Virus record (IMG/VR): IMGVR_UViG_3300046517_002304
Coordinates: 62,001 to 126,000 of that record
Direction: 5' to 3' (one strand)
DNA length: 64,000 nucleotides
This document shows positions 2,739-61,102 of the stretch, piece after piece. Position 1 is the stretch's first letter; every line of letters starts with the position of its first letter. Under the pieces are notes generated by a model that was given only the letters and a program-made list of their open reading frames with translations, ran no database searches and had not been told where the DNA came from. A program made the translations under genes and the position numbers.

Positions 2739-2898
2739 ATTGTTTGATTATTCTGTATTTTATAAACTTATCGTTTTCTATTACACTTACTATTGCTATT
2801 CCGAAGCATTTTCTTAAAATAGGGTTTAAGAGTATTTTTAGTAAAGTCCTGTGAGCTACCGGCTTGCCATCTTCATATATTAGTCCAAGGTTAAGCAT
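2722..2898 (-). CDS. Small hypothetical protein (58 aa, MLNLGLIYEDGKPVAHRTLLKILLNPILRK...)
   Basis: Hand-translated ORF below the track cutoff; fills an otherwise empty gap. Confidence 0.4.
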   Translation of the reverse strand: MLNLGLIYEDGKPVAHRTLLKILLNPILRKCFGIAIVSVIENDKFIKYRIIKQSTVFS

Positions 2899-2907
2899 AT
2901 ATATCGC

Positions 2908-3219
2908 ATGATTCCGTTTAAGTTATTTATAAAAGAGTCTATCTCGGCCCGATTACACGCGGATCAAAAGACATCTGCTAATAAGGAATTAGATCATTTA
3001 TCATCAAAGTTATGGCCTAAAATCCCCTTCCTTATGATAGCCGAAATTTTGGGAAAGTATGAAATATCATTTGATCCTAGAAATATTACTAGGTCATTAG
3101 ATGGAGAAGTTGATTTAGACATACTGTATTCAGGACTTCCAGTTGTTAATTCAAAGTTGGTAATTGTATGGTATCATATGGGGCAAGGTTCATTTAAAAT
3201 TAGATCTTACTTGAAGTGA
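2908..3219 (+). CDS. Putative internal head protein, paralogue of 9174..9491
   Basis: MIPFKLFIKE N-terminus; TATATA-N4-ATG; shares W..IP...I..IL and LY.G.PV.NS.L...WY.M..G with 9174..9491. Confidence 0.7.
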   Translation: MIPFKLFIKESISARLHADQKTSANKELDHLSSKLWPKIPFLMIAEILGKYEISFDPRNITRSLDGEVDLDILYSGLPVVNSKLVIVWYHMGQGSFKIRSYLK

Positions 3220-3234
3220 AAAATAATTTTTGAA

Positions 3235-3637: not shown

Positions 3638-3640
3638 ATT

Positions 3641-5599: not shown

Positions 5600-5635
5600 A
5601 CACTTATTATATCGCCAAAAAACGATATATAACTT

Positions 5636-5923
5636 ATGGACTTTTACAAGTTTCTTAGTTTAATAGAGGCTCCTGCTCCCATGCCTCCAGCAGGTGGCGC
5701 ACCTGGGCCAATGCCTAATGCTGGACCAATGCCAGCCGCTCCACCAGGTCAGCCACCGCAAGCAGGAGCACCCCCACCAGAGCCACCAGGACCGCCAGGC
5801 ACAGAGCCACCACCAGATGGGCAAGATCAGCCAGTTCCTGATGTAGAAGTGCCTACAATGGACGCCTGGAGCGTTTTAGACAAGTTTGTTAAAAATAGCA
5901 AGGGTAAGAAAGCTAAGCCATGA
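5636..5923 (+). CDS. Pro/Gly/Ala-rich protein with capsid-targeting-like N-terminus and basic tail
   Basis: MDFYKFLSLIE, APAPMPPAGG..., C-terminus KSKGKKAKP; TATATA-N4-ATG. Confidence 0.7.
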   Translation: MDFYKFLSLIEAPAPMPPAGGAPGPMPNAGPMPAAPPGQPPQAGAPPPEPPGPPGTEPPPDGQDQPVPDVEVPTMDAWSVLDKFVKNSKGKKAKP

Positions 5924-6777: not shown

Positions 6778-7605
6778 TTAATCTCTGTATCGGTCGGCAA
6801 CTCTACTAATTGGCACTTGGAATTCTACTTGCGATTTATAATAATCTTCGGTATTTTTTTCACCAGTTATCATTTCTAAAAACTCAATCCATTTATCCCC
6901 GTTCCAAGAATAAACTCTACCCCAAGAATACTCTGGTTTTTGTAATTCTTGTATTACCTTTTGATTAAACTTGTACCCTTCTTCGCCGTCAAGAATTCCG
7001 AAACTACTATGTTGCATTAAGTCATGTAGGTAATTTAATATTATGTGCTCTACATTTGGCTGTGATTGTCTTTGAAATCTAGTTGATGTTTTATTTCCTG
7101 ATGGGCTGATGTCGGGAACCTTGCCTCTATTTGCTAGATTAATAAATTTCCTAATGGGAATCTCTGCATGGCTTTCTACTGGATATATTACTCCAGTAAT
7201 ATACTTTGGGGGAATGTCGCGCTTTACCATTGTTTGCAAATGACTTTCTCTATCCCATTTTTCTCTATCGTCTACATCTGGTTCTAGCAAAGATGCAGGA
7301 ACTTCTAAAATAAAAATTATTTCTTTTCCACCGAAATTCATTACTGCTTTGTGAGAGTACATGTCAGCTCGGCCAGATGAAAAAGTAAAAAATATTCCAG
7401 GGCTTGTATTTTTATAATTCATTCTTGTCTTGTCAAATTTTAGGCCACCCTGAACAATTTCCCAGAAAAACTTTGTGCTTGTTCCGTGATAAACAACAAT
7501 TTTTTTGTTGCCTAGTGATTTCTTAAATTCAGGCTTATCAAATGGATCATGAACGATTGATAAATCAATCGGAGATTCGGAAACAAGCCATTTTCTAAAA
7601 TTCAT
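6778..7605 (-). CDS. Putative ADP-ribosyltransferase-fold protein with capsid-targeting-like N-terminus
   Basis: MNFRKWLVSE from ATG 7605; VYHGTS...GGL...PGIFFT...ADMYS...FILEV...DIPPKYI pattern typical of ART/PARP-like folds; TAAATA-N5-ATG. Confidence 0.7.
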   Translation of the reverse strand: MNFRKWLVSESPIDLSIVHDPFDKPEFKKSLGNKKIVVYHGTSTKFFWEIVQGGLKFDKTRMNYKNTSPGIFFTFSSGRADMYSHKAVMNFGGKEIIFILEVPASLLEPDVDDREKWDRESHLQTMVKRDIPPKYITGVIYPVESHAEIPIRKFINLANRGKVPDISPSGNKTSTRFQRQSQPNVEHIILNYLHDLMQHSSFGILDGEEGYKFNQKVIQELQKPEYSWGRVYSWNGDKWIEFLEMITGEKNTEDYYKSQVEFQVPISRVADRYRD

Positions 7606-7647
7606 ATAATTATTTACTGTTCCCGGCACGATAAACTAGTACATAAT

Positions 7648-9843: not shown

Positions 9844-10203
9844 CTATAGAATTGTAACGCCAGAAACAGGTGCTTCTACTAATAGAACATCTTTTCCAGA
9901 CATTTGCTCATTTTGCTTAACTTGGCTCTTAACTTCACCAGTAGATGTAATTGTTGGAGGCTGCTCAAGGATAAGTGATTCCTTACCAGCGTTACTCAAA
10001 TCTTCAATTACCGAAATAGAGCCTCTCATTTGTTCGCGTAGGTAACTGTCCCCACGGAAGCACTGGCCTGGACCAATAATGCTCTTTCCGTCTGCCGAAA
10101 TTTTCGGTAGCATAATGTCTGCCTTAGTTGTGTTCTTCATAAGATACATTCCTGTTCCAATTGTTCTTGCTTTCATAGCCATAGCCTTTTCGTGTTGATT
10201 CAT
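9844..10203 (-). CDS. Late protein, possibly head core/scaffold-associated
   Basis: CTAAATA box and AGGAG upstream; LILE/LLVE motifs resemble prohead-protease sites (inference). Confidence 0.5.
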   Translation of the reverse strand: MNQHEKAMAMKARTIGTGMYLMKNTTKADIMLPKISADGKSIIGPGQCFRGDSYLREQMRGSISVIEDLSNAGKESLILEQPPTITSTGEVKSQVKQNEQMSGKDVLLVEAPVSGVTIL

Positions 10204-10287
10204 ATAGATCTCCTGTATTATTTAGGGTTCTTAACTAAAATAGTGCGAATTTTGGATATTTAATATATCAGGAGATAATATTTTACT

Positions 10288-19131: not shown

Positions 19132-19400
19132 GATAATTCTTTATTGCTCTTAATTTTTTCTATAATTTCCTGTAGTAAAGCGATTGTAACCGGGCTAACA
19201 TGCCCATTGCTACCAGCAATACGTAAAGCGTCAGTAAGTTCCTGTAGTGCGTTTTTTGCTTTCTTCCTAAGTTGTATTCCGGTTTGGGAGGACATAAGAT
19301 TGACATTCCAAAAATCTTGGTCGTTACTGGGTTGACGGGGCCTAGGCGGGGGAGGAATCTGAAAATCGGCTTCTTGTAGGTGTTGTTGGAATGTTTTCAT
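19128..19400 (-). CDS. Hypothetical protein with capsid-targeting-like N-terminus (MKTFQQHLQE)
   Basis: Closest match to the T4 IP peptide MKTYQEFIAE; TAAATA-N4-ATG; PPPPRP tract. Confidence 0.72.
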   Translation of the reverse strand: MKTFQQHLQEADFQIPPPPRPRQPSNDQDFWNVNLMSSQTGIQLRKKAKNALQELTDALRIAGSNGHVSPVTIALLQEIIEKIKSNKELS

Positions 19401-19417
19401 AATGTATTTATGGTTTT

Positions 19418-25726: not shown

Positions 25727-25740
25727 ATGATATATATTGT

Positions 25741-28328: not shown

Positions 28329-28344
28329 ACCATATTTACTATGG

Positions 28345-31572: not shown

Positions 31573-31598
31573 TCTAATCACGCTAACCTAAATATAGT

Positions 31599-39367: not shown

Positions 39368-39403
39368 AATGTATTTACTGCTATTTGACGATAATATAGT
39401 GCT

Positions 39404-45400: not shown

Positions 45401-46664
45401 ATGTTAGTCCATCGTCAGCGCTGAAGGCTACATATGTTCCAGTAGACCCGGTAAACACATAGTAGGGGCACATCAGAGTTCCATTTGCTAGTTGCAAAAT
45501 TACTGATGTTGTATCTTTGTTAGTCCCTGAGCTAATAGCAATTCTAGATCCCCAGGTAATGGATAGATCGCCGTGAACCGTGCCTCGTATGACGTATGGA
45601 GTAGCCGTAGCTCCACTATTTGGCTGATCATTAAATGTCAGCAAAACTGTTTTAGCCGTACTAACCATGACTTCTATATCAATTAATGTTCTGCCGGATG
45701 CCGGTGTCATGATCGTTATTGGCCCAGACCATGTTACTCCGTTATCTGACGAAGTACGATATGCGACATATGCGTCCAGCCCGCCAGATCCGCCAGTTGA
45801 ATAAGCCATGAACAATCTGTTATCAGGAGCGGCTAAGCGGCACATACCAGGGGATTCATTGTTAGCTCCGTCATTAATAATGTCAGAACTAAATCCACGC
45901 TGAGGTATCGTACCGCAACCGATAATATCTGCCATATAATTGTTAACAGCAGAATACAGATTTCTCCAATCTGCACCAGTTAAGCTACTACCGCAACCAG
46001 CAACAGATACCTGACTGCTAGTACCGGCACCATTATCCGATAGAATTTTTACGGTTTGACCGGAAGTAAAACCAGTATTTGTTCCCGTAAACTGATTTGA
46101 GGCTACTCCATTTAAGTAAGCGTGACCATGCGTTGAGTCCTCAAGGTTTACTCCAAATAAACCTATATTAGACGCCATGTTAAATGTGCCGGTATTATCG
46201 GCGACATTCGCTATTCCATAATTAAATCTATGACTTGAGGTTGGGGTGCCAATGTAGGTGTTGCTTGGGGGGATGCCTATTAATCCACCGTTATCGCTAA
46301 CCGGGATTGTATTTTTCCAAACAAATAATGATGCACTACTTGTTTTGAAATTAGGCGAGCCAACTGTAGGATCAAAATTAGAATTAATGTAATCAACTGG
46401 AGTTGTCGCTGAGTTTGTGCCAGTATAACCAGCATCGGTAGCAAATGTAGGTGACCCTACTTTAGTTGCTCCGTAAGAGTTTTGAACTAAATTCGTTAAT
46501 GCGGTAGCTTCGTCTGCGGCAGAAAATACATAAAGAGCATCTAATTTTTGCCATACACCAGCATAGTACAAAGCGTCTATTAACTTTGCGTAAGCAGTTG
46601 AGCGCGGCAAATTTGGCTGTGTTGCCAGTCGGACAAGAAATTGATTAACTTGAGGCGATGTCAT
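42489..46664 (-). CDS. Large virion protein: two tandem modules each ending in a BNR/Asp-box (sialidase-like) propeller, then 20-aa Cys repeats and a C-terminal domain
   Basis: Eight Asp boxes (SSDNGVTW, ADDGLTW, KDNGATW, HDGGITW, SSDNGLTW, SSDNGATW, TDNGATW, NDGGTTW); duplicated FL.RLAT.P...AY..LID.LY..GVW.K.D. Confidence 0.85.
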   Translation of the reverse strand: MTSPQVNQFLVRLATQPNLPRSTAYAKLIDALYYAGVWQKLDALYVFSAADEATALTNLVQNSYGATKVGSPTFATDAGYTGTNSATTPVDYINSNFDPTVGSPNFKTSSASLFVWKNTIPVSDNGGLIGIPPSNTYIGTPTSSHRFNYGIANVADNTGTFNMASNIGLFGVNLEDSTHGHAYLNGVASNQFTGTNTGFTSGQTVKILSDNGAGTSSQVSVAGCGSSLTGADWRNLYSAVNNYMADIIGCGTIPQRGFSSDIINDGANNESPGMCRLAAPDNRLFMAYSTGGSGGLDAYVAYRTSSDNGVTWSGPITIMTPASGRTLIDIEVMVSTAKTVLLTFNDQPNSGATATPYVIRGTVHGDLSITWGSRIAISSGTNKDTTSVILQLANGTLMCPYYVFTGSTGTYVAFSADDGLTWGGDVQITSNGTGDDWSESNFIQFSNGIIYGIIRNDNGGTPSRKGYWRTSSKDNGATWAIPVQIFNNTIAPEPARPALLREPNGDLFFVSRFASVSNTPNTSVGYVYSHDGGITWSTPITIYTIGQFFTGSYVYSQGFYDASTQTLMYAIAVGDFNAAQIVFQQFIPLSISATLPSPQSLQFLNRLATYPDTNRAAAYSTLIDGLYADGVWSKIDILNIYAAADTATALTNLIQSSFNSSVVGSLTFTTNSGYVGSGTNSSYINTTFNPTVGTPNFALNSASVFAWRATAPGGDNGLLLGTSLDDKNYIQVYTPGPRYQWACNAGDSSTSSLEPTGLVTKTGLFGATRVASNSVYGYYAGIPLLHSTGAASMPSEVFRTVGSGASASSVTTSTVSAISIGRGMTGADVRNLNVYIQNYLNDIFSIRPEIRFGYTSDAVNDGANNYGAGLGRLLDGRLLCTYHIGDGTGISANLVFRTSSDNGLTWSAATTILTPTTGRSFDYGRVAVLTDGTILVSYVDQLNSGSNNTAKIVKGIVNNDLSITWSALATITSGVFADAAPCGPALRLQNGNLLIGLTALNDAITVVTSSDNGATWGNEHIVTSASGKRFGFMAFVQKANGNIFGVLRGDSLTTADKGYWTTVSTDNGATWSSPIQIFNNTHVPLPSEASLIITPTGRLMFFGRFGAQQPAFSYSNDGGTTWSTESFYYSYNSTFTYGEIIETQGIYDTTTNSVLFGLGLGSFVPSGQITLQQFLPLVETATFTNVCSFNATGHVDHKIALVLPCSSAVAISFNVQHMATCHVTCTCGLSASGKEGELDQCSIICASNIHSSGQIVRNAFCDMTCECILIVLRLVNGTGGLIFGGCADIDVFYGYFAKYMVGSVVYDCRQARVGVLDKVAIKKVRIVNDAGLIMYVDTFNRNWNEYDLCTPSNALAIATAYLEEQVVDAERRAGRCSFTDPLPNIECGKQV

Positions 46665-46670
46665 GTTTTA

Positions 46671-47762
46671 TTATTTAAACTTTTTATATACCTCTTTATA
46701 AATTACCGTAGACTGCGGATCAGGCTCTACAGTAGTATTTAGTATGCGATTCAATCTATCTAAAGGAACTTTAATTGTTGGAATTCTACTTATTTCGTTT
46801 GAAGTGACAGTAATTTTTTTATCTAAGATATAATGTATATTATCGCCAAGATATTCGGTAATTAAATGCTTTACTGGTCCAGTTCCCTTGATATAAACTG
46901 TTTCTCCGATGTGGAACCGTACGTAAACCAAATGATGGGCTATATTTTCATGAAGACGCAAAACACAGAAGCAGCTAATATTAAGCGATGCTCTGTACAC
47001 TATTTTTGCGGAAACTTCTATGAACGAAGATTCTGATAAATGGCAAGTACTTTTACTTATGTTTCTACCGGAAGAACTAAAATTAGACAAGCATATAATA
47101 TGATTAGTGCCTATGTGTGACACTTTTGAAGATGTTGTGATATTAGAATTACATAATACCCTACATGTATCATTATTTGCATTTTTTCCTAATGCCACAA
47201 TGTTGGAATTACAATTTATACTATTTGCCGCAACATGAGCCACGCCTGAAGATGTCGCGATATTAGAATTACACAACAATCTACATGTATCATTATTTGT
47301 ATTTTTACCCGATGCATTGATATTAGAGATACAAACTATATGGTCAGTGCCTATGTGTGATACTCTTGAAGATGACGCGATAATTGAGGAACAAGGTATA
47401 TTGGATGTTAAGCCGCGCAATATTCTGCTATTTCCGCTAATATTAGAAGTACATATAGCATTAGTTGAATCTAGATGAGCTACTTTTGCATTAGCGATTA
47501 TTGTAGAGTCACACCGTACATTAAGGCTAACTATGTAAACAACTTTTGTAGATAGAGTTATGTTAGAGCTGCAAACTATGTGGCAAGTTGCATTATGCAC
47601 AACGGCACAAGATGATGTAACATTAGAAGCGCTTATTTCATTTGTGGTCGTAATGCACGTTAGTTTAGCACTAGCATTAATATTAGATGAACAGACTAAG
47701 TTGGTGTTTCCAGCTTGAAGTAAGCCATTCTTAAAGAAAAATTGATAACGGTAACCTAACAT
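46671..47762 (-). CDS. Protein of ~20-aa Cys/Ser/Asn repeats with a small C-terminal beta domain
   Basis: C.SNI repeat with 20-aa period (DTCRLLCNSNIATSSGVAHV / DTCRVLCNSNITTSSKVSHI). Confidence 0.75.
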   Translation of the reverse strand: MLGYRYQFFFKNGLLQAGNTNLVCSSNINASAKLTCITTTNEISASNVTSSCAVVHNATCHIVCSSNITLSTKVVYIVSLNVRCDSTIIANAKVAHLDSTNAICTSNISGNSRILRGLTSNIPCSSIIASSSRVSHIGTDHIVCISNINASGKNTNNDTCRLLCNSNIATSSGVAHVAANSINCNSNIVALGKNANNDTCRVLCNSNITTSSKVSHIGTNHIICLSNFSSSGRNISKSTCHLSESSFIEVSAKIVYRASLNISCFCVLRLHENIAHHLVYVRFHIGETVYIKGTGPVKHLITEYLGDNIHYILDKKITVTSNEISRIPTIKVPLDRLNRILNTTVEPDPQSTVIYKEVYKKFK

Positions 47763-50700: not shown

Positions 50701-50848
50701 CATACCATTTCACGCTCCCCGACCTGCTAGGCAACACTAACCACCAGCTAATTAATCCATTGGCAAGAGAATGCTTGCGATTGACTGGGTTTGGGAAGTC
50801 AATATTATTATTAGATATGGAGAATAACTGTGAGCTAATTAGGGGCAT
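47762..50848 (-). CDS. LamG/concanavalin A-like virion protein A (3 LamG domains plus conserved C-terminal module)
   Basis: 3x WH/WQ-type strand...DG...DDVR[VI][YW]NR.L; shared C-terminal EFQFGNAQGDDGAF; TAAATA-N4-ATG. Confidence 0.88.
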   Translation of the reverse strand: MPLISSQLFSISNNNIDFPNPVNRKHSLANGLISWWLVLPSRSGSVKWYDLIGSNHGTLTTMPQATNGFRGSSRKGGFGSMLLDGIAGSVSVGAKPNLDLAGPFTISCWCNLTGTGANLVPFSKVVAGTNGYMIYFGSQSLAPQFFCYGLTPANITWGSSGLNNGWHFIAAGFDGGNTFISVDGKTPVKSSTTGSPSPAVGTPFNIGIYGASNAWFPGYVDDVRVYNRALNANEINQMYQNSQQGYPNLINRTTKRIWNGSVNIVNYPNGPNTSQPTIKNNLKQTQLVNPRSTLNKGLVSWWLCVPSRMSGPLWQDIAGKNHGTLVSAGAGLVNAGFRPNIRQGGFGSMLFNSNFTSYVTVPFSQSFNIGIYTISVWFKTNGNNMFITDSNGATVDKFRLIIGVVGGKGTSQKLTAEIFSTAGSNYTDVTSQNTVNDNKWHNAVTVMDGAKLSLFIDGVLASTPLNVQPGVITGEADNFFIGEGGNGVNPTGGNFFNGYIDDVRIWNRPLVAQEIQQVYLDALSGYQKTLNRRITDPLNFGVAISEIVKYTNGPNTSQTSIRNNLRQTQLINQRNPLNKGLLAWYLCTPSRAGSINWFDISGNNKHGTFTNMSRIDDGFRSNTRQGGFGRMRLGSAAGYITSTINTGLSNSFTMSVWVNPIAIANNMILIASNVAALSDYWATISSLNNNKWRASLYDGTQNPSVQSAAPNIITGQWQQVVFVRDRATNKLLLYYNGKSAATPVTDQTTVVPVYSAFNIGFETGGNVIQASVDDVRIWNRALSAQEIQQVYLDSLSGYQKTLNEENKRLSNYAQFGITPNPTNTNLKGVDVRQTANQIVFRQMLTDSSGNIVTAGPTSIYLYELQNDGGIRAYDFTRNQFTVNSLVSPSATMSQQMAAGGTLATGLWTYALTNPTALTPGTVYLTQINNSNASPSWVVKEFQFGNAQGDDGAFTEFIVTAGSTTNTVNTNRTETSGFWNKSVLAFTTGSLKGISIKLNSYTGGGAFATNISLPTAPVAGDRGLIVGTE
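50055..50098. repeat. 44-nt identical segment shared with 58813..58856
   Basis: ACAATGTTAACTGATCCATTCCAGATTCGCTTTGTTGTGCGATT present in both LamG genes A and D. Confidence 0.9.
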
Positions 50849-50928
50849 ACTTTATTTAATGTTTATATCAATAATTGCCGAACATATATATTTTTGTATT
50901 TATCGTTGTTTCAAATTTACCTTTATAG

Positions 50929-51412: not shown

Positions 51413-51520
51413 GCATTTATGCATACTTTTCAATATTTTACTCATGTTATTCTGCTGTTTGCCGATAAGTACTGTTACAATATGTAAAAGCAATTAGTAT
51501 TTTAAAACAGAAAGAAAATC

Positions 51521-52891: not shown

Positions 52892-55090
52892 TCCAGTATC
52901 GTTTCTAGACGGAGCAACTGGCAAAGCCGAACTTACCGTAAATGTGCCATTGCTAAAGGCAGAAACATGAGCAGACAACCCTTTACACGCTCCCGAAGTA
53001 AACCCTATAACCGATCCTACCCAGAAAGATGTAGCATCAGTTCTGTTGGTCGTTATTGACGTTGTGCTACTCCCTAGCCCCACTACAAACTCTGTAAATG
53101 CACCATCATCACCTTGTGCATTTCCAAACTGAAATTCTCTAGTCTGTGGAATACCCCCAGTAACGGAATTAGATACTTGGCTGATATAGATTGATCCAAC
53201 CGTAAATGCCGAAAGCTGATTGATAGCATAGGTCCAAATTCCAGTAGCCGTCGTTGCATTATTAATGGTCTGATGCTTCATATTATCTGTGGATTTAACA
53301 GGGGTTCCGACAATAAAGGCATTTGTACTAAAATCATAATTTCTTAAAGATCCATCGCTTTGTAGCTCAAATATAGAAATTGTAGTTGTGCCTGAAGAAG
53401 CTGGATTCCCACTGTCTATAAAAAAGTTACGGAATATAATTGCTTTGCTTGTTTGTCTAACGTCAATCCCCTTAACTCCAGAGTTAGATGAAATATAAAA
53501 GGGAAAATTTCTTTTTTCCACAACACGGTTTAATGTCTTCTGATAGCCAAGCAAAGAATCAAGATAAATCTGCTTAATTTCTTGTGCAGTTAATGGACGA
53601 TTCCATATTCTTGCGTCATCTACTAAGCCATTAAAAAAGTTAGATGCAGTGCCGCTAGCATTCGCGCCAATGCGTATCGGTAGACCTGCTGCTGTCGGAT
53701 CTACCGATTGCGGAGTTGATGCTATTTGGTTCCCATTTACATAGAGGTATAGATTGAGTCCATCCCATACCATACCGATATGCGCCCATTTACCTACTGC
53801 CCATCCATCGGGAAACTGTGTGTGGTTAGCCGATCCGGTATTATTCAATTCTACTTGCCACCGTGAAGCATTAGAAATAATGCCGAAACAATTTATGTCA
53901 TTCCAGATATTTCCCTTAGCAAATACTACGCCTCCTGTTGTCGATAGTGGTTTAGCCCATATTGATAAAGATCCAACGTGCGTAAGGTTAAGCGATGCTT
54001 TATCTGCTATTTCAACGTATGTCGCACTGCCGTCTAGTTGAATATACCCAAATCCGCCCTGTCTCATATTGGATTTAAATCCAGTTGTAGCTTGCGCCAC
54101 TCCAGAGAGCGTTCCGTGGTTCTGGTTAAGTAGGTCAAGCCACTTTGGCCCACCTATTTTGTTGGGTAAACATAACCACCATGCTATTAGTCCTTTGTTT
54201 AGCGGATTACGTTGATTTATTAACTGTGTTTGGCGTAAATTATTTATAATGCTTGGCTGGCTAGTGTTAGGGCCGTTAGGATAGTTAACAATGTTGTTGT
54301 TTCCGATATTGATTTTCTTAGTTGTGCGATTAATTAGATTAGGATAACCCTGTATTGAATTCTGATAGACTTGACTTATTTCCCTCGCCATCAACGCACG
54401 GTTATAGATGCGACAATCGTCTAATTGTCCACCGAAATTCCTGAGGTTTGAATTTCTGCCGAATGCTCCAGCCGTTTGTAGCGTTACATTTTTTCCAGCA
54501 TAACTAAATATGCCACTGTCGCTTTTGCCATTCAGGTAATAGATTACATTTAATCCAGCGTCCATTGTTACAGCAACGTGGTACCAGATACCTACCGTTA
54601 TTGCCGTTCTGCTAATGCCAACTGGATTGTAATCGCCTGATCGGCCCAGTGAAATAAAAGCTGAATTGCTGCCACCGCCGCCGTTATTCCCAAACTCCAT
54701 TCCCGCGTCACCGATACTATCTGCCGCGCAAAACCACGATTGTATTGTTGCCTCAGGAACTACCGAACGCTTAACCCAACAGCATAGCGTATAGATAGAC
54801 AATGCTGGAAATGTAACATTTATTGCGTCATCTACGCCGTCAAACTGAACGGCACCGAATGCACCGCGGCGAGTAGAGCCGCGAAAGCCACTTGCCCCAG
54901 TTGCCATGCTGGTGAGGGTGCCGTGATTAGCTCCTACTATGTCATACCATTTCACGCTGCCCGCCTTACTTGGTAGACAAAGGTACCAGGCCACTAGGCC
55001 AGACATAAGGGGATTCTTGCTGTTAATTAAGCTAGTTTGATTTATATTGTTGCTGGATACAACGAATGGTTTAGAATTTTTTAACAGCAT
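52874..55090 (-). CDS. LamG virion protein B (2 LamG domains plus conserved C-terminal module)
   Basis: Paralogue of 47762..50848; TAAATA-N4-ATG. Confidence 0.88.
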   Translation of the reverse strand: MLLKNSKPFVVSSNNINQTSLINSKNPLMSGLVAWYLCLPSKAGSVKWYDIVGANHGTLTSMATGASGFRGSTRRGAFGAVQFDGVDDAINVTFPALSIYTLCCWVKRSVVPEATIQSWFCAADSIGDAGMEFGNNGGGGSNSAFISLGRSGDYNPVGISRTAITVGIWYHVAVTMDAGLNVIYYLNGKSDSGIFSYAGKNVTLQTAGAFGRNSNLRNFGGQLDDCRIYNRALMAREISQVYQNSIQGYPNLINRTTKKINIGNNNIVNYPNGPNTSQPSIINNLRQTQLINQRNPLNKGLIAWWLCLPNKIGGPKWLDLLNQNHGTLSGVAQATTGFKSNMRQGGFGYIQLDGSATYVEIADKASLNLTHVGSLSIWAKPLSTTGGVVFAKGNIWNDINCFGIISNASRWQVELNNTGSANHTQFPDGWAVGKWAHIGMVWDGLNLYLYVNGNQIASTPQSVDPTAAGLPIRIGANASGTASNFFNGLVDDARIWNRPLTAQEIKQIYLDSLLGYQKTLNRVVEKRNFPFYISSNSGVKGIDVRQTSKAIIFRNFFIDSGNPASSGTTTISIFELQSDGSLRNYDFSTNAFIVGTPVKSTDNMKHQTINNATTATGIWTYAINQLSAFTVGSIYISQVSNSVTGGIPQTREFQFGNAQGDDGAFTEFVVGLGSSTTSITTNRTDATSFWVGSVIGFTSGACKGLSAHVSAFSNGTFTVSSALPVAPSRNDTGLIFGF
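54903..54962. repeat. 60-nt near-identical segment (1 mismatch) shared with 59461..59520
   Basis: GCCATGCTGGTGAGGGTGCCGTGATTAG[C/T]TCCTACTATGTCATACCATTTCACGCTGCCC in LamG genes B and D. Confidence 0.9.
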
Positions 55091-55097
55091 ATAGTAT

Positions 55098-57335
55098 TTA
55101 CTGCACGCTTATGATAATCCCTCTATCCCCTACATTTGGTGTACTTGGCAAACTAGCCGATAATGTAAATGATCCCCCTGAATATGAAGATACTTTTGCA
55201 CTTTTACCTTTAAGGCTTCCTGTAGTAAATGCTATTTCAGCACTATTCCAGTAGCCTGATGCTTCGGTGCGATTAGTGTTTAATACCGTCAAGCTATTGT
55301 TTGGTTTGGCGACAAACTCTTGAAAGAATCCATCGTCACCCGGTTGGTTTCCGAATTGAAATTCTTGTGCCTGCCACATTGGGGACGCATTAGAATTGTT
55401 AAACTCAGCTATGTACATGGCTCCATTTGTAAACGCTTGTGTATTAAATAAAGCATAGGTCCACATGCCAGTATTGCCTTGTTGCTTTGCCGTTATCGAT
55501 GGACTACTTAATGTTCCGTAAGAAAAAGTGTTGGTAGACCAATCATATTGTTTTAAATCGCCATCAGATTGAATTTCAAAAAGATAAATTTGTGTTGATC
55601 CTGTTGTGACGGCCGCACCACTATTGTTTAGCATACATGATCTTAAAACAAGTTCAGTATTAGTTTGAACAATATCAATGCCTTTGAATCCTGAATTTTT
55701 GTTCGCAGGAAAATAGCCAAACCTAGATGTATGGTTTAGTAAACCTGGATAGCCTTGTAATGAATTAAGGTACATTGCCTGAATTTCGCTTATATTTAGC
55801 TTACGATTATAAAAGCGAACGTCATTAATATTGCCTTTAAAGAAATAGTTTGCATTACCTGAACTTTGTGCTGCCCCGATCATGGTTGGTGTTGTAAAAC
55901 TATTAATATTTGCGAATGTTCCAGCAGTCACATTTGAATCGTCTACACGAGCGCCATTTAAATATACTTGAATCGCTGCTGTTGTAGTTCCTCCGTTGTA
56001 GGATGCCGCAACATGATGCCATTTGTTTGTCGGTAGAGTGCCGCTGTAGTAACGTCCTATAAATGCTCCATTAGCATCGTCGTAGCAGATCAATGCCAGT
56101 TGTGAACCATTATTTGCATTGAAGTTAAAAATATACTCTTTTGCCACGCCAACGCTATCTTTATATTTTGCAAGAATGGTAGGTGCTCCGCCAGTAGTAT
56201 TAAAAGAGCTGGCATTGACCCATGCCGATACTGTGAATGCTCCACTGGGATGTAGAACATTTCCAGCATTAGCATTGAACGCAGTGTTGTCAAATAGTAA
56301 TGAACCAAATCCACCTTGATGTGTAGTAGGTCTAAATCCATTAGCGGTAGAATTAACTCTCACTAATGCAGCATGATTCTGTCCTACTATATCTAAGAAT
56401 GCGCTGCTGCCCAGTTTACTCGGTAAGGCTAGCCACCAAGCCGATAAGCCATTTGCCAAAGCATGTTTTCGGTTTACTAATTGTGTATGCCTTAGATTAT
56501 TCTTGATTGTTGGTTGACTAGTGCTAGGGCCATTCGGTGATTGGACAACGGCAAGAGGCCCAATGTTCATTTTGCGAATCGTACGATTGATCAATCCGGG
56601 GTATCCCTGTTGGCTGTTGTGATACATTTGAGCAATTTCTATTGCGCTTAATCCGCGATTATAAACTCGTACATCATCCATATTGCCATTAAAATGATTA
56701 GTGGCACTCCCTCCCTGGAAATAACCAAGCTGATAGTCTAATCCACTAGAGTAGGTTCGTGTAATAGTAACAGAGGTATCTTGTTTTCCGTTTACATACA
56801 AAGTCATGGTTGTAGATAAATATGTAACGGCGACATGATACCATTGATTTAAAACGAAAACTGTATTTGATATTATATCATCAGCGACGTTTACTTTGCC
56901 GAAATGTAGTTTTGAGTCAGATCCGGCAACGTAAAATTCATAACCATTAGCAGGCCCGGAAATAATATTATTGTTTCTAGCGACTATTACTGTTTGATAA
57001 ATCCATGCAGATATAGTTAATGGTGCTCCAGTAATATTAAGAATGGCAGGACTACCAAGATCTGCTGCCGTAGTTACACCGTCAAATAGTAGTGAGCCAA
57101 AACCGCCAGGGCGACTACTACCACGGAATCCGTTAGAAGATGGAAACACACCAGTAAGCGCTCCATTATTTCTATATCCAGAAATATCATGCCACTTAGC
57201 ACTTCCCATTCTGTGTGGCAAACATAACCACCATCCCACAAGACCCTTTGCTAGAGGATGCTTGCGATTAACTGGATCGGATTGATTGACGTTGTTTTGA
57301 GCAACGGCAAAAGGATTAGATATCGTTATCGGCAT
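55098..57335 (-). CDS. LamG virion protein C (2 LamG domains plus conserved C-terminal module)
   Basis: Paralogue; TACATA-N4-ATG. Confidence 0.88.
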   Translation of the reverse strand: MPITISNPFAVAQNNVNQSDPVNRKHPLAKGLVGWWLCLPHRMGSAKWHDISGYRNNGALTGVFPSSNGFRGSSRPGGFGSLLFDGVTTAADLGSPAILNITGAPLTISAWIYQTVIVARNNNIISGPANGYEFYVAGSDSKLHFGKVNVADDIISNTVFVLNQWYHVAVTYLSTTMTLYVNGKQDTSVTITRTYSSGLDYQLGYFQGGSATNHFNGNMDDVRVYNRGLSAIEIAQMYHNSQQGYPGLINRTIRKMNIGPLAVVQSPNGPSTSQPTIKNNLRHTQLVNRKHALANGLSAWWLALPSKLGSSAFLDIVGQNHAALVRVNSTANGFRPTTHQGGFGSLLFDNTAFNANAGNVLHPSGAFTVSAWVNASSFNTTGGAPTILAKYKDSVGVAKEYIFNFNANNGSQLALICYDDANGAFIGRYYSGTLPTNKWHHVAASYNGGTTTAAIQVYLNGARVDDSNVTAGTFANINSFTTPTMIGAAQSSGNANYFFKGNINDVRFYNRKLNISEIQAMYLNSLQGYPGLLNHTSRFGYFPANKNSGFKGIDIVQTNTELVLRSCMLNNSGAAVTTGSTQIYLFEIQSDGDLKQYDWSTNTFSYGTLSSPSITAKQQGNTGMWTYALFNTQAFTNGAMYIAEFNNSNASPMWQAQEFQFGNQPGDDGFFQEFVAKPNNSLTVLNTNRTEASGYWNSAEIAFTTGSLKGKSAKVSSYSGGSFTLSASLPSTPNVGDRGIIISVQ

Positions 57336-57347
57336 ATTATATGTATT

Positions 57348-59648
57348 TTATTGACTACCTATTATGACGCCGCTATCGCCGATAGATGGAGTGCTTGGAA
57401 GACTTGTTTTTAAAGTAAACGACCCGCTTGTGTAAGATAGTACTCTTGCCGATATGCCTCTTAAAGATCCGGTAGAAAATGCTATTAAAGAGTTGTTCCA
57501 AAAACTTGTCGCTTCTGATCGGTTTGTCTTAATAGTTAAATTGGTTGAGCCTGGAGTAATAATAAATTTTACGAATGCTCCGTCATCGCCCTGAGCATCG
57601 CCGTATTGGAATTCTTTTGCTTGTACAGCAGGAAAGGCGTTTGTATTTGTGATCTGCGAAATATAAACAGACCCTACATTAAATCCTTGTAGCTGAGCCA
57701 AAGAATATGTCCAGATACCCGTGTTAAATGTTCTATTATTAGTGGTCCTATGAACCATATTAGCTTGTGATTTAACTACTGATCCAGTGGTAAATGCATT
57801 ATTATTAAAGTCAAAAGTTTTGATAGATCCATCTGATTGAACCTCATAAATAGACATCAAGGTATTGCCTGATGTGACCTGATTGCCATTTAGATCCACT
57901 AAGAGTGTTCGTATTACTAATTGTTTAGATGTTTGCTTGACATCTATGCCCTTGATACCTAGGTTAATCGGGGGTGAAATAAATCCTGAATTTGCGTATG
58001 TATTTAATCTTGTGCTGATTTTGCCTAACGTCTTCTGATAGCCAGATAAGCTGTCTAGATAAACCTGCTGAATCTCTTTAGGTACCAGATCCCTCCCGTA
58101 AATTCTAACGTCGTCAATTCTTCCGCTGAATGTACTAGCTTCATTGAAAGCAAACGCACCGATTCTGATATTTCCCGATGTTGTGTCTATTGCTCCCATT
58201 GATGCATTAGAGTTACTCGCGTTGAATACACCATTGATATATAACTCGCCGCTAGTCCCCCGCTTGATTAATGCAACGTGATACCAAGTATTCGGATTAA
58301 TGATCGTTTGAGACTGAGGTACAGTTGAGTTGCCAGAACCGTCTCGCAGCACAGCAGATAATTTATTAAAACCCCCGCCGCTCTGGCCTAAGCCAAGATC
58401 TAATCGTGCGGTTCCACCAGCGCTCGCCATTGCAAATATACATTGTCCTGCACCTATAGCACTTGAATTAAACCAAGCCATTGCGGTGATATTGCCGTTT
58501 GTATTATTAGCTGGCGATAGCTTCGCCATATTTCCGCCGATTAAAACATCGTGCAATACTGTTGCGTCAAATTGCACAGAGCCAAAGCCGCCTTGTCTAG
58601 TGTTAGGTTTGAATACTAAAGCAGGATCTCCGAATTTGCCATGAAACGTATTGAGTAAGTCAAACCATTTGCCTGCGCCCATTCTGCCGGGCACACATAA
58701 CCACCAGGCGAGCAATCCATTATTCAGACTGCTACGCCGATTGACTAACTGATTCTGCTTTAGGTTATTCCTGATTATTGGCTGGCTGGTGTTAGGACCA
58801 TTCGGATAATTCACAATGTTAACTGATCCATTCCAGATTCGCTTTGTTGTGCGATTAATTAAATTAGGATAGCCTTGTTGGCTATTTTGATACAGTTGAT
58901 TTATTTCATTAGCAGACAGTGCGCGATTGTAAAACCGCACATCGTCAACATTGCCGGCTAAGAAGGAATCTGCGATAACTCCACCTCTTTGCCTTGCTCC
59001 AATTGTTACATTGTCCCGATTAATAGGACCGCTTAACCATAGCCCATCATTAGAGTTTGTGACTGCTGTCGCTATTTCTTGCTTGCCGTCTACAAATAAT
59101 AAATACGCAGAACCGTTAGACATAACTGCAACGTGGTGCCATTTGCCATCGCCTATATTTGTTCCGCCTCTTACTCGCCTGTATCCATTTAGCGTGCTTT
59201 CCGCCTCAACTGTTATATTAGTGGTACTGACACCCGTAACAGCAAGCATGTAGAGATAGTTTGCGTTTCCCCCCTCATCTGCCGTTCCGCAGATATATCC
59301 TGATGCCGTGGAAGTATTGATCCATGCCGTTATTGTGCCGGTAAGCGTAGTTCCGCCAAAGTTAGCGATTGATTCGTATACGTAACCAGCCGTTCCATCC
59401 AGTAACATTGAGCCAAATCCACCCTTACGACTACTGCCACGAAATCCATTAGTGGCCTGAGCCATGCTGGTGAGGGTGCCGTGATTAGTTCCTACTATGT
59501 CATACCATTTCACGCTGCCCATTCTGGTAGGCAGGCAGAGCCACCAGGCGAGCAACCCATTTGCAAGATTATGCTTACGATTGACTGGATTAGGGTAATC
59601 AATATTATTAGCAGATATAGAAAACAACTGTGAGCTAATTAATGGCAT
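57348..59648 (-). CDS. LamG virion protein D (2 LamG domains plus conserved C-terminal module)
   Basis: Paralogue; N-terminus MPLISSQLFSIS identical to protein A; TACATA-N4-ATG. Confidence 0.88.
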   Translation of the reverse strand: MPLISSQLFSISANNIDYPNPVNRKHNLANGLLAWWLCLPTRMGSVKWYDIVGTNHGTLTSMAQATNGFRGSSRKGGFGSMLLDGTAGYVYESIANFGGTTLTGTITAWINTSTASGYICGTADEGGNANYLYMLAVTGVSTTNITVEAESTLNGYRRVRGGTNIGDGKWHHVAVMSNGSAYLLFVDGKQEIATAVTNSNDGLWLSGPINRDNVTIGARQRGGVIADSFLAGNVDDVRFYNRALSANEINQLYQNSQQGYPNLINRTTKRIWNGSVNIVNYPNGPNTSQPIIRNNLKQNQLVNRRSSLNNGLLAWWLCVPGRMGAGKWFDLLNTFHGKFGDPALVFKPNTRQGGFGSVQFDATVLHDVLIGGNMAKLSPANNTNGNITAMAWFNSSAIGAGQCIFAMASAGGTARLDLGLGQSGGGFNKLSAVLRDGSGNSTVPQSQTIINPNTWYHVALIKRGTSGELYINGVFNASNSNASMGAIDTTSGNIRIGAFAFNEASTFSGRIDDVRIYGRDLVPKEIQQVYLDSLSGYQKTLGKISTRLNTYANSGFISPPINLGIKGIDVKQTSKQLVIRTLLVDLNGNQVTSGNTLMSIYEVQSDGSIKTFDFNNNAFTTGSVVKSQANMVHRTTNNRTFNTGIWTYSLAQLQGFNVGSVYISQITNTNAFPAVQAKEFQYGDAQGDDGAFVKFIITPGSTNLTIKTNRSEATSFWNNSLIAFSTGSLRGISARVLSYTSGSFTLKTSLPSTPSIGDSGVIIGSQ

Positions 59649-59658
59649 ACAGTATGTA

Positions 59659-61086
59659 TTATAGGTTACCGCCAGTTAGTATGCCGCGATTTATAGATGG
59701 ATTAGAATGTTGAAATACGCCCATATCTGGAAAACCAGTTTGAGTTAGACCAGGCATAGATCCCGGTATACCATGTCCACGAATTGCGGTCCCTTGATTA
59801 ACTATATTGTTTAGCGTAAAGTCGCCTGTAGACGCACTAGTAAATGGTGTCCCTGCTGTAATTACAATGTCAAGAGTATTAGTGTATGGTGAAACTCCAT
59901 TTATTGTATTGGTTGTTGTATCGTCAACGTTATTTCTATTAGCGGTTGTATTGCTATAATAAGCATTGCCGTCCCAGCCCCTGTCTGCCGAAGTGCCTGC
60001 TCCGATTGAGAAATTAAGACCATAACGACCGTTGTTTGCAAGAATATTGTTTTTTATAATTGTTCCGATTCCGGTATCAGTAGAGCCATAATTAATTCCG
60101 TCTTGTCCGCTTCCGTAAACCGTATTTCCTATAATTAAAGTATTGTCGGTGTCGGCAATCTGTATTCCATCTGTAGGTGATCCAGTATTATTTGTAACAA
60201 GATTACCTATTACTCGCCCGCGGGCTGACGCCACTCGTATACCCGCGCAAACGTTGTCGTGTACATAGCAGTTCATACAAGTATTCGCTGTTCCACCGAG
60301 AAGAATGGCTCTACCACCTCCTGAAGTTCCTCCTGTCACCTCGCAATCGCTACAACTAGCATCAGAACTAGTCATATTAATTCCAGTATTAATAAAATTA
60401 GAAACTTTGCAATTTCTTGCTCGGCAGTAAGCATTTAAAGTTATTCCGACAGAAGTCGCAAGAGATGAGCAGTTAACATTAAAATTATCAAACCATACAC
60501 CGGTACCTGTTGCATTTAATCCTGTTAATCCTGAGCTTGTGGATAAAACAATTGACACTATGCCCTTGTCGTTACGAGCAGAAGTATATCCTATTACTTT
60601 TGCTGCTGGCGCGGCGTTTGTCGGTGTAGTAGATGTAGCAAAAGTAAAACTGGCAGTGGTGGTGATTGCTCCCTCTGCCTTGACAAATATTTTATTAGAA
60701 GCGACATAGTTTGTGGCTGCTTGAGTTATTGTACGAAGTGCACCGCCGATTCTGAGTGTAACTCCGGTTCCTGTAGTTAGTCCTGTTGACCTGTCTACAG
60801 TAATAGATGTGGCCGAATTTCGTACGGTTATTTGATACCACGCGGCAACAACGTTTCCGGTGCCTCCGGTAACATACATTATGTTTCCGACTACATCTGT
60901 GCCGAAATTAGCTGTGCCACTAGTAATAGTAGTAGTTCCTGCCGTAACTCCATCCACTACATTGTATTGTGGGTTTGTTTGCTGGCTCCAATCAGTTCCG
61001 GTAGCTCCAGCAACGAAACCCCCGCCATTTATGTCGCTTCCTGTAACAGGGCGTACTTCCCATGCTGTATTTGCGCTAACTGCCAT
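59659..61086 (-). CDS. Right-handed parallel beta-helix (pectate-lyase-fold) virion protein
   Basis: Repeating xxNxVxxN...GI pattern (GNLVTNNTG..DGI, GNTVYGSGQDGI, NNILANNGRYG); C-terminal PDMGVFQH; TATATA-N4-ATG. Confidence 0.8.
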   Translation of the reverse strand: MAVSANTAWEVRPVTGSDINGGGFVAGATGTDWSQQTNPQYNVVDGVTAGTTTITSGTANFGTDVVGNIMYVTGGTGNVVAAWYQITVRNSATSITVDRSTGLTTGTGVTLRIGGALRTITQAATNYVASNKIFVKAEGAITTTASFTFATSTTPTNAAPAAKVIGYTSARNDKGIVSIVLSTSSGLTGLNATGTGVWFDNFNVNCSSLATSVGITLNAYCRARNCKVSNFINTGINMTSSDASCSDCEVTGGTSGGGRAILLGGTANTCMNCYVHDNVCAGIRVASARGRVIGNLVTNNTGSPTDGIQIADTDNTLIIGNTVYGSGQDGINYGSTDTGIGTIIKNNILANNGRYGLNFSIGAGTSADRGWDGNAYYSNTTANRNNVDDTTTNTINGVSPYTNTLDIVITAGTPFTSASTGDFTLNNIVNQGTAIRGHGIPGSMPGLTQTGFPDMGVFQHSNPSINRGILTGGNL

Positions 61087-61102
61087 ACTTTATATATGAA
61101 TC

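What the first reader, a model, noticed from the sequence alone, without database searches (positions are those of the whole stretch)
2898..61096. TA[A/T/C]ATA box exactly 4 nt before ATG in 13 genes: probable leaderless late mRNAs
Seen: hexamer-N4-ATG at starts 2908, 5636, 25741 and 31599 (+) and 19400, 25726, 28328, 39367, 50848, 55090, 57335, 59648 and 61086 (-); variants with N2-N7 at 7605, 9140, 12204, 17289, 23924, 41886 and 46664. These genes show no obvious Shine-Dalgarno. Known: gp55-dependent T4 late promoters are a single TATAAATA element with the start site a few nt downstream. Inference: transcription starts at or next to the AUG, so most late genes here would be single-gene leaderless transcripts.
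Basis: partly seen in the sequence, partly recalled or inferred. Interest (0 to 1): 0.7.

Follow-up and report, generated by a model that had tools for sequence, protein, structure and literature searches.

The report
Late promoter fused to start codons
In this 511-kb uncultivated soil phage a T4-like late-promoter box (TAAATA or TATATA) sits exactly 4 bases before the ATG of about 45 genes that lack a ribosome-binding site, so these late messages probably begin at their own start codon; no RNA data were available to prove it.

Summary
All 13 listed sites are present and all lie at ORF starts. The window has 16 matches against 4.7 expected from shuffles. Across the 511,233-bp phage genome, 45 of 847 ORF starts carry TA[A/T/C]ATA-N4-ATG, against 0.1% of other ATGs. 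Only TAAATA and TATATA are enriched; TACATA is weak. The motif extends to R at -2 and Y at -1 (44/45) before the A of ATG, which fits a pyrimidine/purine start site. Only ATG is enriched at that position, not GTG or TTG, and SD-like sequences occur no more often than at random positions.

Box genes include T4-like late genes (gp19 tube, gp15, LamG virion proteins), and a gp55-like sigma factor lies in the window. Uncultivated relatives (105-595 kb records) show the same box at N4 and N5. T4, SP-15 and a Flavobacterium phage do not.

Best reading: a gp55-type late promoter abutting the start codon, giving leaderless late mRNAs. Box genes are a minority of late-region genes (about 10-14%), and the capsid and sheath genes are SD-led. 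Nothing supports single-gene transcripts. No transcript 5' ends could be mapped, because no RNA run was listed. Leaderless late mRNAs are already known in Thermus phages, so this is a new variant of a known kind.

The parts
2898..2910 (+). TATATA-N4-ATG at the start of a 103-aa ORF
5626..5638 (+). TATATA-N4-ATG at the start of a 95-aa ORF, divergent from the SbcC-like gene
19398..19410 (-). TAAATA-N4-ATG at the start of a 90-aa ORF; the divergent ATG at 19418 is 17 bp away
25724..25743 (.). Palindromic bidirectional unit CAT-N4-TATATA-N4-ATG. One hexamer (25731-25736) serves the ORFs starting at 25726(-) and 25741(+, TnsA-like/head-closure-like, 219 aa). A second copy of this architecture is at genome 43189.
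28326..28338 (-). TAAATA-N4-ATG at the start of a 247-aa ORF. The counterpart ORF (246 aa) in relative L010 also has TAAATA-N4-ATG.
31589..31601 (+). TAAATA-N4-ATG at the start of the gp19-like tail tube gene (212 aa)
39365..39377 (-). TAAATA-N4-ATG at the start of the gp15-like tail sheath stabiliser gene (315 aa)
50846..50858 (-). TAAATA-N4-ATG at the start of a 1028-aa Laminin_G_3 virion protein gene
55088..55100 (-). TAAATA-N4-ATG at the start of a 738-aa Laminin_G_3 paralogue; the box abuts the upstream gene's end
57333..57345 (-). TACATA-N4-ATG at the start of a 745-aa Laminin_G_3 paralogue (weakly supported C variant)
59646..59658 (-). TACATA-N4-ATG at the start of a 766-aa Laminin_G_3 paralogue; the box directly follows the upstream stop codon
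61084..61096 (-). TATATA-N4-ATG at the start of a 475-aa beta-helix protein gene
7603..7616 (-). TAAATA-N5-ATG variant (275-aa ORF). N5 puts the A of ATG at the canonical T4 +1 position.
46662..46677 (-). TAAATA-N7-ATG variant before the 1391-aa BNR/sialidase-like gene; would give a leader of 2-3 nt
10201..10224 (-). Compact leadered form of the same box: TAAATA-N4-AGGAG-N7-ATG before the 119-aa ORF at 9844-10203
33290..33760 (+). gp55-like late sigma factor (156 aa, TTG start behind an AAGGA SD); the candidate reader of the box

Best explanation
TA[A/T]ATA is the -10-like core of this phage's late promoter. It is read by host RNA polymerase carrying the phage's gp55-like sigma factor (window 33290-33760). 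In about 45 genes, 13 of them in the window, the box lies 4 nt before the start codon (4 or 5 nt in relatives). Transcription would then begin at the A of ATG, in a conserved R-Y|A context, and give a leaderless mRNA with a 5'-terminal AUG and no Shine-Dalgarno sequence.

The same box also occurs in a compact leadered form (box-N4/5-GGAG-N7-9-ATG). Two palindromic TATATA boxes would fire in both directions, with only 14 bp between divergent start codons.

Shown: the motif, its spacing, its specificity, its gene class, the sigma gene and its conservation in relatives. Inferred: that the box is a promoter, that gp55-like sigma reads it, and that the 5' end is the A of AUG.
For: 1. Spacing peak. 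N4 has 45 ORF starts against 3, 8, 10 and 5 at N3, N5, N6 and N7, and against 0.1% of other ATGs. The annotation-free count is 44 and 17 against about 10 and 5. The window has 16 matches against 4.67 in shuffles.
2. All six box positions are specific: only TAAATA and TATATA are enriched at N4. A final A rather than T distinguishes the box from a sigma-70 TATAAT.
3. The flanks fit a start site. Position -1 is T in 35 and C in 9 of 45 genes, -2 is G in 21 and A in 16, and +1 is A.
4. Only ATG is enriched at N4 (61 against 16.1 expected). GTG (4 against 6.4) and TTG (10 against 15.1) are not. A need for a 5'-terminal AUG would give this result.
5. SD-like sequences are at the random level in box genes (13%, against 51% in other genes).
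6. The start codons are firm. Only 3 of 45 have any upstream in-frame GTG or TTG, and 22 have an in-frame stop 6 nt upstream.
7. There is little or no room for a leader. Ten of 26 divergent neighbours lie within 17 bp, and two sites are CAT-N4-TATATA-N4-ATG palindromes.
8. The gene class fits late expression: gp19 tube, gp15, head-closure-like and LamG virion proteins. Box genes lie in genome blocks 0-175, 200-250 and 475-500 kb, with only one each at 250-275, 400-425 and 450-475 kb. They are all but absent from the 250-425 kb block of small same-strand genes, which carries a different motif.
9. A gp55-like sigma is present (phrog_234 E 1e-10; Sigma70_r2 above the cut-off). No RNAP beta subunit or T7-type RNAP was detected.
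10. The T4 late promoter is a single TATAAATA at -13 to -6 with no -35 element, and Aeh1 uses CTAAATA (PMC1524935, PMC2988020).
11. The arrangement is conserved in relatives. In 58 non-redundant loci (974 ORFs) the box occurs at N4 in 17, N5 in 10 and N7 in 9, against a baseline of 1-4, and -1 is a pyrimidine in 24 of 27. Six large records, including LR756511.1 (595 kb), show joint N4 and N5 peaks, also in 50-55% GC genomes.
12. About 8 genes have box-N4/5-GGAG-N7-9-ATG. The box is therefore not tied to ATG itself, and the start must lie within about 5 nt of it.
Against: - No transcript 5' end was mapped; no RNA run was listed.
- By T4 numbering the start is the 6th base after the box, which in N4 sites is the T of ATG. 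Leaderless use needs a start one base earlier.
- The upstream TA of the T4 octamer is not conserved here. Only an A before the box, in 24 of 45 genes, remains.
- No gp45-type clamp was found with phrog_223, and gp33 was not tested.
- The most abundant late proteins (capsid, sheath) are SD-led with no nearby box. The box therefore cannot be the only late promoter form, or those genes depend on read-through.
- Nearly all intergenic copies of the extended motif lie within 5 nt of a start codon. An RNA-level signal tied to translation would give the same pattern.
- The host is unknown, so its capacity to translate leaderless mRNA is unknown.
Confidence: 0.65

Rival explanations
1. The conserved UA[A/U]AUA-NN-R-Y-AUG is an RNA-level signal. 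It would be a binding site for a phage translational regulator (as T4 RegA binds AU-rich sites overlapping AUG) or an SD-independent ribosome-loading element, on mRNAs that start further upstream.
For: The motif is tied to start codons: 37 of 94 extended-motif copies are followed by TG, and the intergenic remainder lies 1-19 nt from a start codon. Box genes lack SD, so some other initiation aid is needed if they sit inside longer transcripts. Tandem box genes are separated by only 7-12 bp with no terminators. The phage encodes its own IF3.
Against: No other conserved promoter-like element lies upstream of box genes. Ten divergent pairs leave 17 bp or less between genes. The motif matches the T4-type late promoter core, and a gp55-like sigma is present. 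The palindromic TATATA units serve both strands, which is natural for DNA recognition. The same box precedes GGAG by 4-5 nt in about 8 genes. Pyrimidine at -1 and purine at +1 is a transcription-start signature rather than a known translation signal.
Confidence: 0.12
2. The box marks an endoribonuclease cleavage site. Long late transcripts would be cut just before each AUG, producing leaderless or near-leaderless mRNAs by processing rather than by initiation.
For: Closely packed co-directional box genes without terminators would suit polycistronic precursors. The spacing to AUG is fixed.
Against: No nuclease candidate was identified. Twenty-six of 45 box genes have a divergent upstream neighbour and so still need a promoter at or near the box. 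The similarity to gp55-type promoters and the presence of the sigma gene would be coincidence.
Confidence: 0.05
3. The box is a late promoter but starts at the T4-like 6th or 7th base (the T or G of ATG) or later. These transcripts would then not contain the adjacent AUG, and the box-ATG link would reflect an initiator preference such as TATG.
For: T4 numbering (-13 to -6) predicts +1 at the 6th base after the box (PMC1524935). T-A-T-G offers two pyrimidine/purine steps.
Against: The ATGs are the first possible start codons of long ORFs with good coding potential, and only 3 of 45 have an alternative upstream start. ATG, not merely A or G, is enriched. In relatives the box shifts between N4 and N5 while ATG stays adjacent.
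Confidence: 0.06
4. A chance or compositional effect of AT-rich upstream regions.
For: Upstream regions are AT-rich, and the TACATA variant alone is not enriched.
Against: 0 of 100 shuffles reached the observed count. The excess at ORF starts is about 60-fold. Control hexamers of the same composition show no peak. The pattern is replicated in independent relatives.
Confidence: 0.01

Closest known systems
Bacteriophage T4 late transcription (gp55 sigma, TATAAATA promoters)
   Same: Both have a single short AT-rich -10-like element with no -35 element. Both have a small sigma homologous to region 2 only. In both, the box lies in front of tail and head genes. The core TAAATA is identical to T4 positions -11 to -6 and to the Aeh1 CTAAATA (PMC1524935, PMC2988020, PMC7892883).
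   Different: T4 late mRNAs have SD-containing leaders; T4 has no TAAATA-N4-ATG among its 58 TAAATA-N0-12-ATG matches. The upstream TA of the octamer is not conserved here. N4 needs a start one base closer to the box. A TATATA variant is accepted. No gp45-type clamp was found by phrog_223.
Leaderless middle/late mRNAs of Thermus phages phiYS40 and Lalka27a
   Same: A phage temporal class whose transcripts begin at the initiator codon, with a class-specific -10 element right next to it (PMC3594737; bioRxiv 10.64898/2026.04.20.719267). phiYS40 is linked to altered IF2/IF3 levels, and this phage encodes an IF3.
   Different: Those cases are mapped experimentally, in a host where leaderless mRNAs are common, and use different promoter motifs (for example TAGGGT). 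Here the evidence is sequence only, the promoter is gp55-type, the phage is a 0.5-Mb soil phage of unknown host, and only a minority of late genes are involved.
Leaderless genes of bacteria and archaea recognised by a -10/TATA-like signal at a fixed short distance from the start codon (Deinococcus, Actinobacteria; own knowledge)
   Same: The same logic applies: a promoter element at a fixed distance of a few bases, no SD, and a strong preference for AUG.
   Different: In those organisms the housekeeping sigma is used with TANNNT about 6-7 nt upstream. Here a phage-specific box lies 4-5 nt upstream and is restricted to one temporal gene class.

Membership tests
T4-type (gp55-dependent) late promoter | The phage encodes a gp55-family sigma (region-2-only sigma) | tested here: met
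   phrog_234 'late sigma transcription factor' E 2.9e-11 and 1e-10. Sigma70_r2 scores 24.6-25 bits, just over the 24-bit cut-off. The protein is 156 aa and 22% identical to T4 gp55 in alignment A1.
T4-type (gp55-dependent) late promoter | A single conserved TATAAATA-like element with no conserved -35 element | tested here: met
   The position matrix of 45 sites shows information only at the box, at -2/-1 and weakly at about -28. The core is TA[A/T]ATA. The upstream 'TA' of the T4 octamer is reduced to an A in 24 of 45 sites.
T4-type (gp55-dependent) late promoter | The box lies at -13 to -6, so the start is the 6th base after it | not testable with these tools
   No RNA runs were listed. N4 implies a start at the 5th base; N5, which is equally common in relatives, matches T4.
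T4-type (gp55-dependent) late promoter | Activation by the sliding clamp gp45 and co-activator gp33 | tested here: inconclusive
   phrog_223 (gp45) gave no match in the genome. Other clamp families and gp33 were not searched.
T4-type (gp55-dependent) late promoter | Lies in front of late (virion) genes | tested here: met
   gp19-like, gp15-like, head-closure-like and LamG virion protein genes carry it. It is nearly absent from the 250-425 kb block of small same-strand genes.
Leaderless mRNA | The transcript 5' end coincides with the A of the start codon | not testable with these tools
   No RNA-seq run holding this sequence was listed.
Leaderless mRNA | No Shine-Dalgarno sequence before the start codon | tested here: met
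   SD-like matches of 4 nt or more: 13% of box genes, 51% of other genes, 19% of random positions.
Leaderless mRNA | AUG strongly preferred as start codon | tested here: met
   At N4 after the box: ATG 61 against 16.1 expected, GTG 4 against 6.4, TTG 10 against 15.1.
Leaderless mRNA | Promoter element at a fixed short distance from the start codon | tested here: met
   Sharp N4 peak. N4 plus N5 in relatives.

The most novel reading that the evidence does not exclude
A whole clade of uncultivated 0.1-0.6-Mb phages has fused its gp55-type late promoter to start codons, including bidirectional palindromic units. A defined subset of late proteins would then be made from leaderless mRNAs. The phage-encoded IF3 found in this genome and in some relatives would retune ribosome selectivity between SD-led and leaderless messages during infection. 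That would be a combined transcriptional and translational late switch, not described for T4-like systems.
Probability: 0.15. Interest if true: 0.75.

Novelty: new variant of a known kind. Interest (0 to 1): 0.55.

Why it matters
If the start sites are confirmed, this would be a gp55-type late system that makes leaderless mRNAs, found in a widespread clade of uncultivated huge soil phages. I found no report of that in the paper library I searched.

It would explain how these phages pack divergent and tandem late genes with 14 bp or less between them. It would give a simple sequence rule for calling start codons and late genes in metagenomic phage genomes, namely the box at N4/N5 with Y at -1. 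It would also link phage-encoded initiation factors to a testable function.

As it stands it is a strong sequence-level regularity with a plausible mechanism that has precedent elsewhere.

Tried and rejected
- **RNA evidence.** Two searches for sequencing runs found only DNA soil and rhizosphere metagenomes, and none was listed as RNA.
- **Near-identical DNA in GenBank phages.** No match. The only GenBank hit to the sigma is the unannotated uncultured phage LR756511.1, so no cultured relative with transcript maps exists in that collection.
No RNAP beta (PF00562) and no T7-type RNAP (PF00940) matched. The PF00940 control matched nothing anywhere, and very divergent phiKZ-type subunits could escape PF00562, so absence is not proven.
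- **A host sigma-70 -10 reading.** Rejected, because TATAAT, TAAAAT and TAAATT show no N4 peak and a final A is required. Sigma-70-like promoter matches are at chance level.
- **An upstream second element (TTATC / TCATA).** These are enriched 5-6-mers at -45 to -11 but not positionally fixed. They were left as unexplained AT-rich context around -28.
- **Host inference** from the second sigma factor through NCBIfam and the protein atlas: inconclusive.
- **A link between IF3 and the box.** IF3 is present in only 2 of 6 relatives and absent from the complete 533-kb G005, so it is not a clade-wide partner.
- **Functions of box genes outside the window.** Mostly unknown; the hits were a protease-like, a thioredoxin-domain, a methyltransferase and an HNH endonuclease gene.

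Full report
**Context.** The window is bases 62001-126000 of a single 511,233-bp contig. IMG/VR classes this contig as a complete virus record with direct terminal repeats. It has 39% G+C and reads with the standard code. It is a myovirus with T4-like virion genes:
- tail sheath at 35763-38072(-);
- gp19-like tube at 31599-32237(+);
- gp15-like sheath stabiliser at 38420-39367(-);
- a TnsA-like/head-closure-like gene at 25741-26400(+);
- an SbcC/gp46-like gene at 3641-5599(-);
- a run of Laminin_G_3 virion proteins at 47762-59648(-).

No near-identical DNA is in GenBank phages. The DNA occurs in soil and rhizosphere metagenomes.

**Checking the observation.**
- All 13 hexamer-N4-ATG sites are in the sequence as listed.
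- The pattern TAHATANNNNATG occurs 16 times in the window, against 4.67 +/- 2.14 in dinucleotide-preserving shuffles; none of 100 shuffles reached 16. Thirteen of the 16 are ORF starts.
- I called ORFs over the whole genome with a neutral rule: first ATG of the frame, filtered on codon usage. This gave 847 ORFs covering 91% of the genome.
- The box then lies at spacer 4 in 45 ORFs. Spacers 3, 5, 6 and 7 have 3, 8, 10 and 5 ORFs, larger spacers about 2 each, and 0.1% of all other ATGs carry it.
- Without any annotation, TAAATA is followed by ATG at spacer 4 in 44 cases (5-18 elsewhere) and TATATA in 17 (2-7 elsewhere). Control hexamers show no peak.
- A single-substitution scan shows that every other one-base variant of TAAATA is at background.
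- At ORF starts, TAAATA-N4 (31 against 0.49 expected) and TATATA-N4 (11 against 0.20) are the two commonest hexamers at that position, ahead of every Shine-Dalgarno hexamer.

**Anatomy of the motif.** In the 45 aligned sites the motif extends beyond the hexamer:
- an A precedes the box in 24 of 45;
- position -2 is G or A in 37 of 45;
- position -1 is T in 35 and C in 9;
- the A of ATG follows.

Pyrimidine at -1 and purine at +1 is the usual context of a bacterial transcription start (own knowledge). Nothing else is conserved upstream except a weak A/T preference near -28, and no -35-like element is seen.

At spacer 4 only ATG is enriched (61 against 16.1). GTG (4 against 6.4) and TTG (10 against 15.1) are not. 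SD-like matches occur in 13% of box genes, 51% of the other genes and 19% of random positions. The bulk of genes show the expected purine-rich signal at -11 to -7.

The start codons are secure. Only 3 of 45 have any upstream in-frame GTG or TTG. In 22, the box's own TA plus the next base makes an in-frame stop 6 nt upstream.

**Gene arrangement.**
- Twenty-six box genes have a divergent upstream neighbour, 10 of them within 17 bp. Nineteen have a co-directional neighbour, with a median gap of 16 bp.
- Two sites are perfect palindromic units, CAT-N4-TATATA-N4-ATG (window 25724-25743 and genome 43189). In each, one hexamer serves two divergent ORFs whose start codons are 14 bp apart.
- The tandem genes from 61086 to 52874 each carry their own box, starting 1-6 bp after the previous stop codon.
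- Terminator-like hairpins are at chance level (15 against 14.4 expected; 14 against 14.3). Nothing supports single-gene transcripts. Nested transcripts that read through are more likely.

**Who reads the box.**
- A 156-aa protein at 33290-33760(+) matches the PHROG 'late sigma transcription factor' family of T4 gp55 (E 1e-10 to 3e-11). It also matches Sigma70_r2 just above the cut-off.
- It has a TTG start behind an AAGGA SD, so it is not itself a box gene.
- T4 late promoters are a single TATAAATA at -13 to -6 with no -35 element, and phage Aeh1 uses CTAAATA from -12 (PMC1524935, PMC2988020). gp55 recognises this element through its sigma region-2 homology domain (PMC7892883).
- The box here is the same TAAATA core.
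- No RNAP beta subunit or T7-type RNAP was detected (see the caveats under Tried and rejected).
- A second, full-length sigma of FliA/WhiG type lies at genome 457362-458009.

**Temporal class.** Box genes occupy genome blocks 0-175, 200-250 and 475-500 kb, with one box gene each in 250-275, 400-425 and 450-475 kb. The block at 250-425 kb is made of small ORFs, almost all on one strand. It has almost no box genes and carries a different motif, TTAGTTATCCATA. That motif has 185 copies, and in 45 of them the AGTTATCC core ends exactly 10 nt before an ATG. The two classes are close to mutually exclusive, as expected for different temporal promoter classes.

**The box is not tied to ATG alone.**
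- In the late regions, 51 of 428 ORFs have the box 8-74 nt upstream, against 13 of 419 in the other block.
- About eight of these have the compact form box-N4/5-(A)GGAG-N7-9-ATG, for example window 10201-10224(-).
- In those genes the transcript must start within about 5 nt of the box in order to contain the SD. That agrees with a start at the 5th or 6th base after the box.
- On the other side, the major capsid gene (genome 161684-163135) and the sheath gene are SD-led with no nearby box. Box-N4 genes are about 10% of late-region ORFs, and about 14% if N4-N7 are counted. 'Most late genes' is therefore not right.

**Relatives.**
- The sigma has 242 relatives in IMG/VR, on contigs of up to 533 kb. 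It also occurs on a 634-kb ENA contig and on the 595-kb uncultured phage LR756511.1. None is cultured.
- In 58 non-redundant loci (756 kb, 974 ORFs; sigma 35-57% identical; 29-62% G+C), TA[A/T]ATA lies at N4 in 17 ORF starts, N5 in 10 and N7 in 9, against 1-4 at other spacers. Position -1 is a pyrimidine in 24 of 27.
- Whole-record scans of five large IMG/VR records and of LR756511.1 show joint N4 and N5 peaks. N4 counts are 8, 9, 7, 3, 7 and 14; N5 counts are 3, 11, 8, 3, 7 and 14 (counted by hand from the listed matches).
- Counterpart genes keep the box while the flanks diverge. An example is window 28328(-) and L010 3778(-).
- T4 has no N4 case among its 58 matches. Bacillus phage SP-15 has one, and Flavobacterium phage immuto has five among the matches listed.
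- The arrangement is therefore a trait of this uncultivated clade. N5 puts the A of ATG at the canonical T4 +1 position, and N4 puts it one base closer.

**Interpretation.** The best reading is a gp55-type late promoter abutting the start codon, which gives leaderless late mRNAs. I put this at about 0.65. The main gap is that no transcript 5' end could be examined, because no RNA run was listed.

The rivals are:
- an RNA-level translation signal or operator (about 0.12);
- a processing site (about 0.05);
- a promoter that starts at the T or G of ATG, so that the ATG is coincidental (about 0.06);
- chance (about 0.01).

The palindromic bidirectional units, the 17-bp-or-shorter divergent gaps, the ATG-only enrichment, the Y/R context, the sigma gene and the leadered GGAG form all argue for the promoter reading. 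Two points are the best arguments against it: intergenic copies of the extended motif almost always sit next to start codons, and the spacing is one base off from T4.

**Comparison with what is known.** Leaderless middle and late mRNAs are documented for Thermus phage phiYS40, together with changes in IF2 and IF3 (PMC3594737). They are also documented for Lalka27a (bioRxiv 10.64898/2026.04.20.719267). A promoter box a few bases from the start codon is the standard genomic signature of leaderless genes in several bacterial phyla (own knowledge). T4 itself uses SD-containing leaders. A search of the paper library found no report linking leaderless mRNAs with huge-phage or gp55-type late promoters. 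I therefore rate this a new variant of a known kind.

**Incidental.** The phage encodes a full-length IF3, with IF3_N at 69 bits and IF3_C at 60 bits. IF3 is also present in 2 of 6 large relatives. IF3 is known to discriminate against leaderless mRNAs in E. coli (own knowledge), so this is worth testing, but the link is not clade-wide.

Noticed in passing
genome 250,000-425,000 (outside the window; e.g. G000:C1:339224, 349345, 365058, 370086, minus strand): A second motif at a fixed position, TTAGTTATCCATA. The core AGTTATCC has 185 copies, 162 on the minus strand. It ends exactly 10 nt before an ATG in 45 cases and 13 nt before in 14, often followed by an AGGA-like SD. It is confined to the block of small same-strand ORFs that almost entirely lacks the TAAATA box. 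It is probably an early or middle promoter class, perhaps read by the second sigma factor.
   Followed up: partly
genome about 470,338-470,982 (L113:1438-2082, minus strand): A full-length translation initiation factor IF3 homologue (IF3_N 69 bits, IF3_C 60 bits; 214 aa; apparent GTG start). It is also present in 2 of 6 large relatives (G004, LR756511.1) and absent from the complete 533-kb G005. It is relevant because IF3 affects leaderless translation.
   Followed up: partly
genome 457,362-458,009 (L003:1090-1737, minus strand): A second phage sigma factor, of sigma-70 family FliA/WhiG/SigF type with regions 2 and 4 (215 aa). Its promoter class is unknown.
   Followed up: partly
window 25724-25743 and genome 43189-43208: Two perfect palindromic units, CAT-N4-TATATA-N4-ATG. 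A single hexamer lies 4 nt from divergent start codons on both strands, with 14 bp between the ATGs.
   Followed up: yes
window 47762-59648 (-) and 42489-46664 (-): Four large Laminin_G_3 (concanavalin-like) virion protein paralogues, three of them in tandem (52874-59648) and one at 47762-50848. Each has its own box. Next to them is a 1391-aa BNR/sialidase-like protein. These are probably receptor-binding or tail-fibre-like proteins.
   Followed up: partly
window 20166-21827 (+), 40846-41886 (-); genome 151314-151937 (-): Homing-endonuclease-like genes lie among the late genes. They are a DUF7487/Mom-like gene, a LAGLIDADG+HTH gene (box at N3) and an HNH gene (box at N4). The mobile endonuclease genes seem to have adopted the late box.
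   Followed up: no
genome 153450-153632 (-) (L115): A short Gp23 (major capsid)-like fragment with two in-frame stops. It lies about 8 kb from the intact capsid gene (161684-163135) and near the HNH gene. It may be a remnant of a duplication or of an endonuclease-mediated event.
   Followed up: no
window 23974-24005 (-): The only strong intrinsic-terminator-like hairpin in the scanned parts of the window: 14 pairs followed by a T run, downstream of the 412-aa gene at 24025-25263.
   Followed up: no
whole genome: Only 4 tRNA genes (2 Met, Arg-TCT, Leu-TAA) in a 511-kb phage, all in the 268-358 kb block.
   Followed up: no
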